From Saccostrea cucullata (lineage: Eukaryota): a stretch of 64,000 bases of DNA. The translations under genes and the position numbers were made by a program. Where the stretch lies: NCBI RefSeq assembly GCF_032062105.1, contig NW_026937974.1, positions 1 to 64,000 of the forward strand, in the 5' to 3' direction. Below, in pieces: positions 8,811 through 25,383 of the stretch; the stretch's first letter is position 1; every line of letters begins with the position of its first letter. The notes under the pieces are model-generated. The model was given only the letters and a program-made list of their open reading frames with translations, did not search any database and was not told the DNA's origin.

Positions 8811-10607
8811 GTATTAACATGCAAGACATCAGTCAGCATTTGGTTACACCGTGAATTAGTAAAATTGCGCTGGTATCTGAAAATAGAAAAATAAGAATCT
8901 CAGGACATTGAAAAAATAAGCTATTTCTGAGAATCTATGTCCCCCGCTTAAGATAAAAATAGCATGTGCGGATCATGCGAATCTTGGGGGTGGAGAGGGA
9001 GCGGAGGGGGAAGAATGGCGGGTTGGGCCATAGGGGGTTTTTAAATAAAATTTAATTGCAAAAATCAAAAGCTTCTTGAAATTTGTCTGAAAATGAAAGT
9101 TTTAGACGGATACAGAATGTATGAAATTACAACTTTGACATTTAACCTTTTGACTTCAAATTCTCCATTAGGAAGTTGTGGTTTAAAATTTCACTGCAAA
9201 TACTCAAAGGCTTCTCGAGATATCGCCTGGAAATGAAAGTTTAAGATACACATACAATGTCTGAATTTACGTCATTGATCTTCGACCTTTTGATCTGGAA
9301 ATTAATAGGTTTTCCTTAGTTCATTTTGATTTGTGTTTAATTGTATTGCAAAAAACCTTAAGCTTCTAGAGATGTCACGCTTAAACGAAAGTGTGACAGT
9401 CCGGCAGAAGTACAGCTAGACAGACAGTCAGACCAAAGTCAGTATCTCCCACTTTCACTAGGCCTTCATCAATGAAGGGGGGGGGAGAAACAGGAAAGTT
9501 CACAATAAGTGAGTCTACATATAGCATGCGATACATCCATACACTAATTTAAAAACATGCCTGATTGCAAAAAATGTTGAAATGTAACTCGACGAACGTT
9601 TAGAAGTGACATTATTTTCATTTAGTAATTTTCTGTGAGTAAATAAAAATACAAACCTTGAACATAAAACTTCACTTTTGTAATTCTGCCTTAAAGTCCA
9701 CTGTTGTGTTATTCAGTTGAGAGATGAAATCTTTTCTCATTGCAACATAGGACAATTTTGATGATTTTTAAAGATTCCTAACTTCACCATCTTTGATGAT
9801 GTCATAATTGTCCTGTCATGCATTTCCTTAAATGTCCGAGGATCAACTAATAAATGATACCAAACAATCCAAAACTTCACACTGGTGAAATTTTCAAAAG
9901 GAAACTGGCTAAATTCTTTTCTTATAAACTAGGTCATACAGAAGGGTGTTTGAAAACAGGTTATCCCCCCCCCCAAAAAAAAAGCCAAAATACATGTTCA
10001 TGATCAAATAATTTGAAAACATTTGCGCCATTTTTTCCTATCTTTCTATGTCAACAAGTAGTTCTGTTTTTATTGATCGTAAAGGAAAAAAAATGTTTTC
10101 TTTTCTCTACCAGTAAATCAATATCATACAAGTTGCATACTTTACCTATAATCACACATGAAAAAGAAAACTTTCAAAATCCAGATAAACAGTAGAAACC
10201 AAAGAAAATATCAACAATTAAACTGTTATACAACAACGTAAGGACCGTTCCATTGAGCCCATGCTTCTTCCGAGTCCATTACAGATCCTGATAATATACA
10301 TGTGTAATGTAATTTGGGAGGGCAGTTATTCAAGAAGGTTCTACAGAAGAAAAAATCCCGGTTTTAATATCAGCTTAAATATCTTCATATTTTGTCATTC
10401 TGTTCCTGAACACTTTATTGTGGTGAATTATTTAGTCTCCCTTGACTTAATTTTATTTTGAATTTTAACTCTGCGGTATTTGAGCTTGAAGTTTCAGGTC
10501 AGAATTTCTGTTGTAAAATTGTAATTAACTAAAGGATGTAAAACCATTCGTTTTTCATATTTGCAATGGAAGAACTATTCATAAGCTTTGCAACTAATTC
10601 AAACAAA

Positions 10608-13600
10608 ACTAGGGCTAATTGTAACGGGAACCGTTACAGATGTTCCCCAAACGCTTCCAACTCCTTTTGGTGCCATACTCCCTTTAAGCTTCATTAAAAA
10701 TGACAAACTCTATGCATTTTACACTTTAACAACGTTTCCCTGAAGTATACCGAGTATATTAAAATTTTAGCATTTGCACGCGTGCACATGTAAATGCATG
10801 TGCGTAATGACCATATTTTCTTGTCTACACTATCTATATACATTAATATAATAAAATAATAAAGCATTTAATCGAAAAGTATTAAAAAATACGCTTCATC
10901 AAGTGTATTTTTGATTTTACCCATCTCACGTGCATGCACGTGCATGCATGTGCATGATGACCTTACCTTTTTGTAGGAATCCACTATGTCTATCTATGTT
11001 CTAAATCCCATCCTGTTTGGTTGAAAATCAAAGGAGTTATACCCATTTAAAGTTTAAGCCAATCAGATTGCAGCGCACGTGCATGCGCGTGTTTTCATGA
11101 TACCTGCTATATATTATATTGTAGTATATCCTAATGCATGACTATGTTTAAAATTTCAAAGCATTTCGTCAAAAAACAAAAGAGATATTGAAATCTTTGT
11201 TTCAGCCAATCAGAGGGAAGCGCACGTGCATGCACGTGAGTTCGTGCTAATTTGACCATGTCATATTATCTAGACTATTAATATATCCTTATAGAATGAG
11301 TTTCAAAGCATTTCAATAAAAAATGTAAAAGTTATGGCTATAATAAGTATATCAGTCATTTCACTCATTTCACGCGCACGCACGTGCATGCGTATGCGCG
11401 CAAAATGACCTTCGTTGTGCACACCTACACTTGACACCTATTAACCCTAAAAAGGTTTTAACTTAGTTGGGTGAACAGTTTCTGAGAACACTCGCGGACA
11501 AAAAAAGTACCGGAGAACAAAGAAGAAAAAAAAGAATAATAATAATAATAACTAGAGCCGAGCTCGTTGCAAAGCAACGAGTAGGTCTTCCGTCCTGTTT
11601 GACCGGAAGTAACTTTCATTTAAAAAAAAGAGTAATGAAGTCCCAAAATGGTTTAATCCTCCTAAATGTATGTTAATTAATGCAAAAATAAGCCATTTTT
11701 GAACTTCCGGTTTGACCGGAAGTGATCGACGGACGAAAAATTAATTTTTATGCTTCCAGACATATGAATCCAAAAATTGAAAAGAACAGCAAAAATATGC
11801 AATTTTTGACTACTTCCGGTTTGGCCGGAAGTGACGTCGTCGGACGTATTTTGATGACACCATTAGATAAAGCTTGATATTTTGAACAATTTTGCTTCTT
11901 TGATAAATTACAAATTCCCAATACTTTTTGAGATATAAAGGAAAAACTTTCGGCCCCTTTTGGTCCTTTATTATAGGGGCCAGCCCCTTATCGTTGATAT
12001 ATTTCGAAAGATCTGTGACATTTTCCTTCTTTTGTTCTATATGTTTTAACAAAATATTAACGTGTAAAAAGATATTGCCAAAAATGTGTGAAAATTTTTT
12101 GAATTCCCGATAGGTCTTTTTTGAGCCATAGCAAGTTTCGAGGTGCTGCACTTCCGGAGAATTAAGAACAGGTGTATGTCACATCAGCATGTTGCTCTAT
12201 CTTCGCTGAAAATTTTTTCTATCTATATCATTTTTGAGAAAAATCTGGACAATGTGACCCTTAAAAATCATTAAATCGCGGAAATCTCGAAACCGGACGT
12301 GACGTCACAAAAATAAAAAAATATATATCAGGTTTGATTGATGTTCCATCAGTCCTGAAAGTTTCATGAAAATCGATAGAGCCGTTTCTGAGAAATCGCG
12401 TGCACAAAATCGGTAAGAAAAAAAACAATAATAAAAATAACTAGAGCAAAGCTCGTTGCAAAGCAACGAGTAGGTCTTCCGTCCGGTTTTGACCGGAAGT
12501 GCCGGAAGTGACAGAACAAAAGAAAGCAATGAGCTAAAAAGTCTCCAGTGACTTTATAATTTCAATTTTGCATCAAAACCTTCAAAATAAGCCATTTTTT
12601 GCTACTTCCGGTTTGACCGGAAGTGACGACGACGGACGGAAAAATTACTTTTTATGCTTCCAGAGACATATGTAACCACAAAACTTGTCAAGAACGGCAA
12701 AAAAACGCGTTTTCCGACTACTTCCGGTTTGGCCGGAAGTGACGACGCCGGACGTATCTTGACGACGCCAGTAGATTAAGCTTGACATTTTGAACAACTT
12801 TGCTTCTTTGACCTCTTACAAATTCTTAATACTTTTTGACTTATGAAAGAAAAACTTTCGGCCCCTCTAGGCCCTTAAATTTAGGGGCCAGCCCTTTTTT
12901 TAAGATATCATTTGAAAGATCTTGAAATTTTACACTTCTTTTGTTCTATATGTTTAAACAAAATGTTTACAGGTAAAAAGATATCGTAGAAAAGGTGTTA
13001 AAAATTTTGAAATTTGCGATTTGTCATTTTTCGAGCCATAGCCAGCGCCGACGTACTGCACTTCCGGTAAAAACGAAAGACGTTACGCATATCTATAGAC
13101 TTTGGTCTATCATACCTGAAAGTTTCATGTTTCTATCTAGAGCCATTATTGAGAAAGTCTGGAGACAACCTGACCCTTTAAAATTCATAAAATCGGCAAT
13201 ATTTCCAAACCGGAAGTGACGTCATCAAAACGGAAAAAAATGCATAAGGTTCAAGTAATGTTACATAAGTCCTGAAAGTTTCGTTGAAATCCATCGAGCC
13301 GTTTTCGAGAAATCGCGTGCACAAAATCGGTAAGAAAAAAAAATAATAATAATAATAACTAGAGCAAAGCTCGTTGCAAAGCAACGAAGGTCTTCCGTCC
13401 TGTTTGACCGGAAAATTTGACAGAAAAAAGATAACCAAAAAGTCTCCTGCTATTTTGAACATACTCTTATAACAATTTTGCATCAAAATGTAAAATAAGC
13501 CATTTTTTGCTACTTCCGGTTTGACCGGAAGTGAAGACGGACAGAAAAATTAATTTTATGCCCCCAGAGACATATGTAACCAAAAACTTGTCAAGAACGG

Positions 13601-22681: not shown

Positions 22682-25383
22682 ATTTGTTTACATTGGAGCT
22701 CGACTCGAGGCATTCGATTACATACTCTATTGCGCATGCTCAACAATGACACTAGTGTCTGAAGAGTTCTTATAATCGAATGCACCCCAGTAGATTAGGC
22801 TTGACATTTTGAACAACTTTGCTTCTTTGACCTCTTACAAATTCTTAATGCTTTTTGACTTATGAAAGAAAAACTTTCGGCCCCTCTAGACCCTTAAATT
22901 TAGGGGCCAGCCCTTTTTTTAAGATATCATTTGAAAGATCTTGAAATTTTACACTTCTTTTGTTCTATATGTTTTAACAAAATGTTTACAGGTAAAAAGA
23001 TATCGTAGAAAAGGTGTTAAAAATTTTGAAATTTGCGATTTGTCATTTTTCGAGCCATAGCCAGCGCCGACGTACTGCACTTCCGGTAAAAACGAAAGAC
23101 GTTACGCATATCTATAGACTTTGGTCTATCATATCTGAAAGTTTCATGTTTCTATCTAGAGCCATTATTGAGAAAGTCTGGAGACAACCTGACCCTTTAA
23201 AATTCATAAAATCGGCATTATTTCCAAACCGGAAGTGACGTCATCAAAACGGAAAAAAAGGCATAAGGTTCAAGTAATGTTATATAAGTCCTGAAAGTTT
23301 CGTTGAAATCCATCGAGCCGTTTTTGAGAAATCGCGTGCACAAAATCGGTAAGAAAAAAAAGAATAATAATAATAATAACTAGAAACGATCTCGTTGCGA
23401 GCAACGAGAGGTCTTCCGTCCGATTCTCTGTTATTGTATCATTGAATGAGAATTATTGTTTCAAGTTCATATTAGTCCAACAAAGCTATAGATTCACAGG
23501 GTCAAACATAGCCCTAAGTGAGCCTTTTTCTTTTGTGGAATATATATATATATATATATATATGAGGAAAATCTTCTCAAGTTGAACAAAGCCACGATTA
23601 GTCATTTTGATGTACAACTGATGGTCATACATGTATTTAGAGATTCTAATGCAGGTAGATTTACGCTTTTTTAAAATAATGACTCCAAAGGATAGAGGGG
23701 GGGGGGGGGGCGCAGTAGGCGTCCCGAGTTTTACATAAAGTATATACATGTAGTAAAATAATCTTTACAATAGTCCGAACTTCAGGCGTTGGGTATTTGA
23801 TACCTGCAATAATGTAGCCCTGTGTGATTTTTTTAAAATCTGGTGTTTTTCTGCTCCCGTTGCACAATACTGTGGAGATCCTATAAGGAGTTGTAGCCCT
23901 CTCCCAAAAAAGGGGAGAGGGCTACATTATTGCACCAAGGTTTTTGATATCAATATATTGCTTATAAAAGTGTCTCCGAATTCTCAAGGTAGTGTGTAAT
24001 TAAGGACGGTAATTCTTACTTCATCTTAAATGTTAAAGTCATTTATGGCGTTTATTTGATAAGTTCATACTAGCTGAAATAGAATTAAAAAGATCTTTCT
24101 ATTTCTTTCTTCTTTCTTTTTTTTTTTTTTTTTTAATTTTTTTACTTTATTTAAAGATGGAATTTCCCTGCAAATTACAGTTTAAATCAATCGCGTTTCA
24201 TAAATATCAGGTATTTAAAACAGTAACCGATTTATTTACCGACTCGGAATTAAAAAAAAACATATAGAGAAGTTGGATATTAAAAAAAAAATTAATTTTA
24301 ACTGACATTTAATTTAAATAGCAAATATGTAAATCTACACGAAATTTCGTTATTTCTATTTTTTAGCTCAGATAAGCCATTTATAGGTTCAATGATATAT
24401 TAAATAGGAAAAGTAGTAAATCTCAAATAATTTGTTCAGGAAATGTTTTTGAAAATATTTACTTTGCCTTTTCTTTTGAAAACTGAGCATCTGGTCTACA
24501 AAGTTACATTTTATAAGATTAAAAAAATATTGTAATGCTAGCTTTTGAAGAGAATTGCATGATTTTTATGTTTATACAATACTTTAATTTCTTCTATTAA
24601 ATTCTATCATTTAACAATGCATAGTAAATAAAGCATTTCTGATCATTTCCAAACATCATTAAAATATAATTTCATTTCATGCTTTTGTCCGACTTGCAAG
24701 AAACATTTCCAGTACGATCTGTTAAATCATGCGTTTAAGATGCTTGCGGTAAAAAGGGTAACCAAAGGTTGCAGAAAGCAACTCCGGATTTCCTTCTTGT
24801 GGACTTCCCATCTTATATACTTTTTCGACATATATTTTGAATTCTTTGAAGACACAATTTTTAAGATCAGTTTGATATAGCAGTTATAATGTTGTAGTAA
24901 TTCCACAACTGTGAAACATACTACATTATTTGGTTTGAGGAAATGAAAATATTAATTTTTGTTGTATTGAACAAGATCTTTTAATTAGACTGTGGTACTG
25001 TTTATTGCCGATACATAAATTTTAATGTATAAAATATTTCTTAGGCATGTTAGAGCATTAGTGAATGAAAATGTCTTTAAAATTCGAAATCTTAGATTTC
25101 CGGTATTCGGCTTCCGCCAAAACTATGTTTATCAACTGCTTGGTGAGACTGACGTCATTCTTTGTTTACGCCGCCTGCTGTTAGCATCGAAACTACGAAG
25201 TCAGAAGTCAACATTTACGCATACTTTATTTCGGCATCTGTTGAACAACCTGTCGTAAAGATCAAGATATATCAAGTCTAAATCGAGGAAAAGTATACTG
25301 TGTCAGTTTATTTGAGAGTCGTAAGTATCTGAACGTGTTTTAACGTTACATGATTGTAATAATAATTGCTGTTTGGTTATCAG

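What the first reader, a model, noticed from the sequence alone, without database searches (positions are those of the whole stretch)
10608..23420. Cassette-like Helentron arrays: nine hairpin ends but only two palindromic ends, with mixed unit types
Seen: ACTAG+hairpin ends at 10608, 11551, 12440, 13358, 14214, 16514, 17299, 18142 and 23379, but the opposite palindromic end (AAGGTCTTCCG...CGGAAGACCTT) only at 15139 and 18104. Units abut at (AAT)n/A-rich tracts, and neighbours are diverged or unrelated in core (the 10608 core is a different family), yet one unit (12440-13357) reappears near-identical with the same boundaries at 18142-23378. Inference: ordinary nesting would stack both end types and ordinary tandem duplication would give identical neighbours, so this looks like headless cassettes being added site-specifically at the microsatellite (or head replacement / terminator bypass in rolling-circle transposition), an integron-like growth mode for HINE arrays.
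Basis: partly seen in the sequence, partly recalled or inferred. Interest (0 to 1): 0.8.

Follow-up and report, generated by a model that had tools for sequence, protein, structure and literature searches.

The report
Nested Helentron transposons that lost heads
The region is a pile of small non-coding rolling-circle transposons (Helentron-type HINEs) inserted into each other's (AAT)n tracts; genome-wide they keep roughly one head per tail, and this locus has too few heads most likely because its head stacks were deleted, not because headless cassettes were added.

Summary
There are nine ACTAG+hairpin ends and only two palindromic ends. Units abut at (AAT)n, and one unit recurs at 97.9% identity.

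All units are minus-strand HINEs, the non-autonomous Helentrons. The palindrome is the 5' head (subTIR plus its inverted repeat). The ACTAG-hairpin is the 3' tail.

Genome-wide the ends are roughly balanced:
- In 20 loci sampled without regard to structure, I found 72 heads and 58 tails.
- Heads sit in stacks with a 55-70 bp period.
- Tails and heads parse as brackets: 48 type-concordant pairs against 1 discordant.
- 44% of 4,471 exact tails of the main family lie directly on AATAATAA.

So arrays grow by complete elements inserting into the microsatellite next to a resident head. That is ordinary nesting, but strongly site-directed.

This window is an outlier, and secondary loss is the likeliest cause. 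A sister contig (C3101, 99-99.5% identical over array 2) keeps two heads where the window has unit D. It also keeps a 53-bp head module that the window lacks, at a site bounded by direct repeats. D's own spacer is broken.

The integron-like headless-cassette idea is not supported as the general mode. One anomaly keeps a minor version alive: unit A is 99% identical to other copies, while the units nested inside it are much older. A-type tails also outnumber A-type heads 1.3:1.

The parts
10608..11550 (-). Unit A. An A-type HINE body: 3' tail (ACTAG, TGTAACGG/CCGTTACA hairpin, subTIR ATGTTCCCC), core with a recurring CACGTGCATGC-type motif, and (AAT)5 at 11535-11549. No A-type head anywhere in the window.
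   Evidence: It is 99% identical to many genomic copies and 99.3% to L005:8278-9220. A-type heads (ATGTTCCCCAA..TTGGGGAACAT) exist elsewhere, 7,869 copies.
11551..12439 (-). Unit B. A B-type HINE body (tail + core + A-rich/(AAT) tract), headless here.
   Evidence: Its best relative elsewhere is 89-91% identical.
12440..13357 (-). Unit C. A B-type HINE body, interrupted in its (AAT)5 by D's tail.
   Evidence: Complete paralogues with their own spacer and head exist at 97.4% identity (L027, L028). They serve as an unoccupied microsatellite for comparison.
13358..14213 (-). Unit D. An old, degenerate B-type body. Its own spacer breaks off at about 14186 and is followed by 27 nt of filler. Likely left breakpoint of the deletion that removed the head stack.
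   Evidence: The D|E junction is unique in the genome. The best relative in the sample is no more than 82% identical. The sister contig has headC + headA in this place.
14214..15167 (-). Unit E. A complete HINE: tail (3' subTIR lost through a 15-bp deletion), core, A-rich tract, about 30-nt spacer, and palindromic head at 15139-15167.
15168..16513 (.). Unit H. A high-copy unit without a canonical ACTAG-hairpin tail. Its right end (..AATAGTAAGAAT) acts as a target for F's tail. Its left end abuts a head.
   Evidence: At least 2,012 candidate copies at 95-97%, all starting at 15168. Tandem H-H units occur in L024, and a K-type head lies to its left in C3 and C3101.
16514..17298 (-). Unit F. A G-type HINE body, headless, interrupted in its (AAT)4 by G.
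   Evidence: F and G are 86.8% identical.
17299..18134 (-). Unit G. A complete G-type HINE with its head at 18104-18134.
   Evidence: Many copies are 97-98% identical, and stacked G-type heads occur in C16006.
18142..23378 (-). Unit C'. A B-type body 97.9% identical to C. It was inserted in the AATAATA remnant after G's head. It is split by a Harbinger and interrupted in its (AAT)5 by the next tail.
   Evidence: The sister contig is 99.5% identical here.
18475..22787 (.). PIF/Harbinger DNA transposon inserted in C'. TIR G(A/G)GTGCATTCGATTA; CAG target duplication at 18472-18474 and 22788-22790.
   Evidence: DDE_Tnp_4 and Myb/SANT-like ORFs.
23379..23998 (-). Unit X'. An X-type tail (23379-23425) plus the core of a low-copy family. 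No head follows anywhere in the window. The right limit was not determined.
   Evidence: Two other loci match from the tail onward at 82%, and the sister contig at 99%.

Best explanation
The region holds minus-strand non-autonomous Helentrons (HINEs) of several families.

Each complete element reads, 5' to 3' on the minus strand:
- a palindromic head (subTIR plus its inverted repeat);
- a spacer of about 30 nt;
- an (ATT)n microsatellite;
- a core of about 0.8 kb;
- a 3' subTIR, a hairpin, and CTAGT.

Shown: new complete copies integrate preferentially at TT inside that microsatellite, or right beside a resident head. Repeated hits therefore build Russian-doll nests. Core+tail units pile up on one side, looking like a tandem array of about 0.9 kb units. 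Spacer+head modules pile up on the other side as a stack with a 55-70 bp period.

Inferred for this window: because all heads of a nest lie within a few hundred bases, one deletion can remove them all.
- One deletion has its left breakpoint in D's spacer (about 14186). It removed the heads of D, C, B and A.
- A 53-bp deletion between direct repeats removed the head module after E's head.
- The heads of X', C', F and H, expected to the right of X', are missing through a further loss or rearrangement. I did not see its breakpoint.

This leaves nine tails, two heads and units that abut at (AAT)n. C and C' share boundaries because both were hit in the same microsatellite.
For: Anatomy:
- It matches published HINE structure: 5' subTIR + IR + microsatellite, 3' subTIR + palindrome, TT/T-rich target (PMC4067079; PMC7492417).

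Genome-wide balance:
- 12,436 exact b-type heads, against at most about 18,200 tails derived from 43,816 AGGTCTTCCG sites.
- 7,869 A-type heads against 10,371 A-type tails.

Sample of 20 loci taken from the first-listed tail hits:
- 72 heads against 58 tails.
- Stacks of spacer+head modules separated by AAT remnants.
- Balanced arrays such as 5:5 in L003, 5:5 in L012 and 3:3 in L001.
- Bracket parse gives 48 family-concordant pairs against 1 discordant.

Site preference:
- 30 of 58 tails lie directly on a HINE microsatellite and 14 of 58 directly after a head.
- 1,987 of 4,471 exact B-type tails are preceded by AATAATAA.

Secondary loss at this locus:
- Sister contig C3101 is 99.5% identical over 16099-19967 and 99% over 23300-24000.
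- It has C's spacer+head and an A-type spacer+head where the window has D.
- It has a 53-bp spacer+head module after E's head, bounded by CCTTAAT/CCCTAAT repeats. A third locus (C3) also has a second head module there.
- D's spacer is truncated, and the D|E junction is unique in the genome.
- Units B to E are 72-80% identical, so they are not recent tandem duplicates.
Against: - The ages are not monotonic, as simple nesting requires. The outermost unit A is 99% identical to many copies. Yet B has no relative above 91% and D none above 82% in the sample.
- Explaining this needs an extra event. One option is a merger of the two A units seen in C3101. Another is a complete A inserting beside a resident tail and then losing its head.
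- C3101 itself is unbalanced: four tails (A1, A2, B, C) with two heads, plus an orphan K-type head.
- A-type tails exceed A-type heads 1.3:1 genome-wide, although the tail pattern is the stricter one.
- Several sampled arrays (L006, L009, L016) lack expected heads.
- The deletion assumed to the right of X' is inferred, not seen. The sister contig has the same junction.
- The assembly could not be checked with long reads.
Confidence: 0.68

Rival explanations
1. One-ended, headless addition. The Rep protein cuts at the 3' terminus of a resident tail and joins a unit there that consists only of microsatellite + core + tail. The array would then grow on the tail side without new heads.
For: - Unit A is young (99% to other copies), yet it sits outside much older units (B at most 91%). 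It has no head in either the window or the sister contig.
- A-type tails outnumber A-type heads 1.3:1.
- Some sampled arrays lack heads.
Against: - Most arrays are balanced, with stacked heads that match by family.
- A young A copy in L005 lies in a nest with four stacked A heads.
- The age order along B to E is not monotonic in this direction either: C 98%, B 91%, D 82%, E 92%.
- Head loss by small deletion is directly documented at this locus.
Confidence: 0.12
2. Terminator read-through. Transposition started at the innermost head of a nest, bypassed several tails, and moved a composite with one head and several tails to this site.
For: - Terminator bypass is established for Helitrons (my own knowledge of Helraiser work; cited in PMC12628747).
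- The order H-F-G with a single head recurs at another locus (L029, 84-87%).
Against: - The D|E junction is unique.
- No second copy of the array with different flanks was found. The only full match is the sister contig.
- Recurrent junction types at 82-96% identity are expected from independent site-specific nesting.
- E is separated from D by a broken spacer and filler, not by a normal junction.
Confidence: 0.08
3. Tandem duplication or unequal crossing-over between (AAT)n tracts multiplied a microsatellite + core + tail unit behind one complete element.
For: - The period of about 0.9 kb, with microsatellites at every junction.
- Mosaic divergence between the window and C3101, from 99.5% down to 88%, shows that recombination is active in these arrays.
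Against: - Neighbours are 72-80% identical or belong to different families, with A-type next to B-type.
- Elsewhere, head stacks mirror the tail order by family, which duplication cannot produce.
Confidence: 0.05
4. Assembly artefact. The 55-70 bp head stacks were collapsed or dropped by the assembler.
For: - Short tandem palindromic repeats are hard to assemble.
- The public runs available gave only short unitigs, so the locus could not be verified.
Against: - A second contig (C3101) shows the same G-head|C'|X' structure at 99-99.5%.
- Stacks of up to five heads are assembled elsewhere.
- Collapse cannot remove an A-type head, break D's spacer, or add filler.
Confidence: 0.05

Closest known systems
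HINEs / DINE-1-like non-autonomous Helentrons (Thomas et al. 2014, PMC4067079)
   Same: Palindromic 5' subTIR a few bases from the end, a 3' subTIR followed by a short hairpin, a microsatellite, no coding capacity, and insertion at TT or T-rich sites without target duplication.
   Different: Here the target is overwhelmingly the element's own (AAT)n tract or the base next to a resident head. This produces deep, bracket-like nests. That behaviour is not described in the paper (no relevant 'nested' hits).
Cg_HINE elements of the Pacific oyster (PMC7492417; satellitome papers PMC8268682, PMC12628747)
   Same: The left module is subTIR + IR + microsatellite and the right module is subTIR + palindrome. 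Insertion prefers T-rich/TT sites. Arrays with a Helitron box on only one side, and 'shuffled' loci with elements inserted in elements, are reported.
   Different: Those papers concern 150-170 bp internal satellite repeats. They propose aberrant rolling-circle replication or recombination to explain one-sided arrays. Here the repeating unit is the whole core+tail of nested elements, and head stacks form a second short repeat. The species of this window is unknown to me.
Tandem arrays of truncated plant Helitrons (Xiong, Dooner and Du 2016, as summarised in PMC12628747)
   Same: Rolling-circle elements in head-to-tail arrays with unequal numbers of the two ends.
   Different: The plant arrays have many 5' ends and a single 3' end and are ascribed to rolling-circle amplification. 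This locus has many 3' ends, and its neighbours are diverged or unrelated.
Integron cassette arrays
   Same: Serial, oriented addition of units at one recombination site.
   Different: No integrase/attI/attC logic was seen. The units that are added are complete transposons with both ends. Growth is by nesting, not by insertion at a fixed array head.

Membership tests
HINE (non-autonomous Helentron) | 5' subterminal inverted repeat with adjacent complementary repeat (palindromic head) within a few bases of the 5' end | tested here: met
   Present at 15139-15167 and 18104-18134. There are 12,436 such heads genome-wide.
HINE (non-autonomous Helentron) | 3' subTIR complementary to the 5' subTIR, followed by a short hairpin close to the 3' terminus | tested here: met
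   On the minus strand, CGGAAGACCT is followed by an 8-10 bp stem and then CTAGT, at eight of the nine tails. The A-type uses its own subTIR.
HINE (non-autonomous Helentron) | Insertion at TT or T-rich sites without target-site duplication | tested here: met
   Junctions lie inside (AAT)n, which reads (ATT)n on the element strand. No duplication is seen. A paralogous uninterrupted microsatellite exists in L027, against interrupted C and C'.
HINE (non-autonomous Helentron) | No coding capacity | tested here: met
   Only chance ORFs of 113 aa or less lie in 10608-18471.
HINE (non-autonomous Helentron) | An autonomous Helentron partner (Rep-helicase-endonuclease) sharing the termini | tested here: inconclusive
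   At least 150 Helitron_like_N hits lie in open frames of 2,000-2,800 aa in the genome. One OTU + Rep + PIF1 ORF pair lies in this window at 35291-41766. Shared termini could not be shown. No endonuclease domain was found in the window copy.
Integron-like cassette system | Units lacking their own recombination or initiation end are captured at one fixed site | tested here: not met
   Elsewhere the units carry heads, which are stacked and matched by family. Insertion sites are the many microsatellites of resident elements.
Integron-like cassette system | A site-specific recombinase encoded next to the array | not tested
   No dedicated search was made. The only nearby enzymes seen are a Harbinger transposase and a Helentron Rep/helicase.

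The most novel reading that the evidence does not exclude
A minority of units, unit A at 10608-11550 being the candidate, were integrated without a head at the 3' terminus of a resident tail. In this reading the Helentron Rep uses a resident terminator as both target and initiation site (one-ended, end-targeted transposition). HINE arrays would then also grow from the tail side, and this would account for the excess of about 30% of A-type tails over heads.
Probability: 0.12. Interest if true: 0.75.

Novelty: new variant of a known kind. Interest (0 to 1): 0.35.

Why it matters
The elements themselves are ordinary HINEs. The useful result is the growth rule. These elements carry their own preferred landing site next to the head. 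Repeated self-targeting therefore builds bracket-like nests, which look like a 0.9-kb tandem array on one side and a 60-bp tandem array on the other.

A single deletion of the compact head stack then leaves many tails and few heads. This gives a simple, testable route to satellite-like arrays. It may also explain the 'one-sided' Helitron-associated arrays that mollusc satellite-DNA studies have puzzled over.

It also warns annotators that counts of ends at a single locus can mislead.

Tried and rejected
Later searches gave only hit tables. The left part of C3101 (A1/A2) and more arrays could therefore not be read.
- The look-up of sequencing runs found only low-share runs. Read laying returned short unitigs of the repeat families. 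That shows high copy number but nothing specific to this locus.
- TRF did not detect the roughly 145-bp periodic motif inside A.
- ARAGORN found no tRNA in the F and G cores.
- I first read recurrent junctions (A|B in at least 37 loci, G-head|C-type, C'|X') as signs of a mobile composite. I rejected this because identities are only at family level (82-96%) and site-specific nesting predicts the same junction types.
- I first took X' for a 47-bp solo tail. One search showed that its core continues as a low-copy family.
- A quick look for the termini of the autonomous Helentron in the window found nothing convincing.
- Using best identity to another copy as an age proxy gave a non-monotonic order under every model.
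Full report
**1. Observation**

- The hairpin core occurs 9 times against 0.01 expected by chance.
- The 10-mer AGGTCTTCCG occurs 11 times against 0.02 expected.
- Palindromes of the type AAGGTCTTCCG..CGGAAGACCTT occur only at 15139-15167 and 18104-18134. No degenerate copy appears anywhere in the 64 kb, even with two mismatches.
- The 10608 unit has another hairpin and another subTIR, so it belongs to another family.
- The 14214 tail lacks its subTIR through a 15-bp deletion.
- Units abut at (AAT)4-5 or A-rich tracts.
- B, C, D and E are 72-80% identical to each other.
- C and C' are 97.9% identical once a 4,313-bp PIF/Harbinger element is removed. That element has a CAG target duplication and carries DDE_Tnp_4 and Myb/SANT ORFs.

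**2. What the ends are**

Published Helentron/HINE anatomy has these features (PMC4067079; PMC7492417):
- a 5' subTIR with an adjacent complementary repeat, followed by a microsatellite;
- a 3' subTIR followed by a short palindrome;
- insertion at TT without a target duplication.

Read on the minus strand, every unit here fits. The palindrome is the 5' head. The ACTAG-hairpin is the 3' tail, reading CGGAAGACCT, hairpin, CTAGT. A complete element is head, spacer of about 30 nt, (ATT)n, core, tail. E (14214-15167) and G (17299-18134) are complete. The others lack heads. No unit has an ORF above 113 aa.

**3. The genome-wide picture**

The genome is 1.17 Gb. It holds the following counts:
- 6,217 B-type tails at up to 2 mismatches, many about 0.9 kb apart;
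- 12,436 exact b-type heads, often 50-70 bp apart;
- 43,816 AGGTCTTCCG sites, which leaves at most about 18,200 tails;
- 7,869 A-type heads and 10,371 A-type tails.

I fetched 10 kb around each of the first 20 listed tail hits, chosen without regard to structure.
- They hold 72 heads and 58 tails.
- The heads are stacked as repeats of [AAT remnant + spacer + palindrome].
- Arrays are typically balanced: L003 5:5, L012 5:5, L001 3:3, L014 2:2, L017 2:2.
- Parsing tails as opening brackets and heads as closing brackets gives 48 pairs of matching family (A-type or b-type) and 1 mismatch. Unmatched brackets are about equal on both sides, 23 closing and 18 opening, as expected from 10-kb edges.

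Only nesting, or side-by-side insertion, of complete elements produces mirrored stacks like these.

**4. Site specificity**

Of 58 sampled tails:
- 30 lie directly on the microsatellite of another HINE;
- 14 lie directly after another element's head;
- 3 lie on the equivalent tract of the H-type unit.

Genome-wide, 1,987 of 4,471 exact B-type tails are preceded by AATAATAA. C and C' share boundaries because both were hit in the same tract. A 97.4% paralogue (L027) shows that tract uninterrupted, followed by its spacer and head.

**5. Why this window is short of heads**

Contig C3101 is a sister copy of the locus, either a haplotig or a recent duplicate.
- It is 99.5% identical over 16099-19967.
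- It is 99% identical over 23300-24000.
- It is 97% identical over the left flank plus A.
- It is more diverged, 88-95%, in between.

It differs from the window in two informative places.

(a) Where the window has D, C3101 has a different sequence. There, C's microsatellite is followed by C's spacer+head, then AAT remnants, an A-type spacer+head, and E's intact tail. In the window, D's own spacer stops after 13 nt at about 14186. It is followed by 27 nt of filler and then E's tail. That junction is unique in the genome.

(b) After E's head, C3101 carries a further 53-bp spacer+head module. It is bounded by CCTTAAT/CCCTAAT direct repeats, and the window lacks it. A third locus (C3, L023) also has a second head module at that place.

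Heads were therefore present and were lost. Because nesting packs all heads of a nest into a few hundred bases, few deletions suffice. One, starting in D's spacer, would remove the heads of D, C, B and A.

For array 2 the bracket reading is H(F(G)(C'(X'.., so the missing heads would all lie to the right of X'. No head exists there. X' is a low-copy family whose core runs to at least 23998. This second loss is inferred, not observed.

**6. What does not fit**

- A is 99% identical to many copies and 99.3% to L005. B has no relative above 91% and D none above 82% in the sample.
- A host cannot be younger than its guests. Either A was renewed, or it arrived later beside a resident tail and lost its head, or it never had one. 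The renewal route is possible because C3101 has two A units, A1 and A2, and a merger would give the window's A|B junction.
- C3101 is itself unbalanced, and it carries an orphan head.
- A-type tails exceed A-type heads 1.3:1 although the tail pattern is the stricter one.
- Some sampled arrays lack expected heads.

These points keep a minor headless or one-ended mode possible. I put it at about 0.12.

**7. Rivals**

- Read-through composites: the H-F-G order with one head recurs in L029. However, the array as a whole has no second copy apart from the sister contig, and recurrent junction types are expected from site-specific nesting.
- Tandem duplication: excluded as the main cause by 72-80% identity between neighbours, by mixed families, and by mirrored head stacks elsewhere.
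- Assembly collapse: unlikely, because two contigs agree for array 2 and five-head stacks are assembled elsewhere. The reads available could not test it.

**8. Comparison with what is known**

The elements are members of the HINE kind. Four defining features were tested and met. The autonomous partner is plausible but its termini are not linked to these elements.

- Oyster studies describe HINE modules, a T-rich target, one-sided arrays and shuffled loci.
- Plant Helitron arrays have the opposite end imbalance.
- I found no description of self-targeted recursive nesting into the 5' microsatellite with head stacks. My literature access is limited.
- Other first-stage notes on this genome describe similar nests by title. 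I reached the same reading independently from the sample.

**9. Verdict**

The integron-like interpretation is not supported as the general mode. Site-specific growth at the microsatellite is supported. The local head deficit is best explained by secondary deletion. This is a new behavioural variant of a known kind, of moderate interest.

Noticed in passing
window 35291-41766 (+): Two overlapping long ORFs. The first (1,615 aa) has OTU protease, DUF6570 and Helitron_like_N (Rep). The second (575 aa) has a PIF1 helicase. Together they look like an autonomous Helentron-type gene, split by a frameshift or an intron. The sister contig has a copy. The genome has at least 150 Rep hits in open frames of 2,000-2,800 aa. 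Its termini were not found.
   Followed up: partly
window 18475-22787: A PIF/Harbinger transposon inside unit C'. It has about 15-bp TIRs, a CAG target duplication, a DDE_Tnp_4 transposase in two ORFs on the minus strand, and a Myb/SANT-like ORF on the plus strand. It is also present in the sister contig.
   Followed up: yes
window 15168-16513: Unit H has at least 2,012 candidate copies at 95-97%. All start exactly at 15168, right after a head. It forms H-H tandems elsewhere (L024) and has no ACTAG-hairpin tail. Its right end acts as an insertion target for three different tail families. Its termini and mode of spread are unexplained.
   Followed up: partly
window 11703-11723, 12604-12624, 13512-13532, 14354-14374: Each B-type unit carries internal palindromes of the form ACTTCCGG..CCGGAAGT. 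These share the CTTCCG/CGGAAG core of the head subTIR and may be extra protein-binding sites.
   Followed up: no
window about 16815-16835 and 17597-17615; also X-type cores in L003 and L023: G-type and X-type cores contain a tRNA T-arm-like motif (GGATTCGAACCC type). ARAGORN calls no tRNA.
   Followed up: partly
whole genome (G000): A-type tails (10,371 exact) outnumber A-type heads (7,869 exact) by 1.3:1 even though the tail pattern is longer and contains CpGs. This is a real but modest genome-wide head deficit.
   Followed up: partly
window 9900-24000 against contig C3101:117394-132049: The sister copy shows mosaic divergence: 99-99.5% from about 15940 rightwards, about 94% in E, 88% in A2-B-C and 97% in the left flank plus A. 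This suggests recombination or conversion within the arrays, or very uneven haplotype divergence.
   Followed up: partly
window 32283-32860: A MITE-like element of about 580 bp with terminal inverted repeats (CAGGGTTCGACACTAAC..) and repeated ATTAGTCCG palindromes.
   Followed up: no
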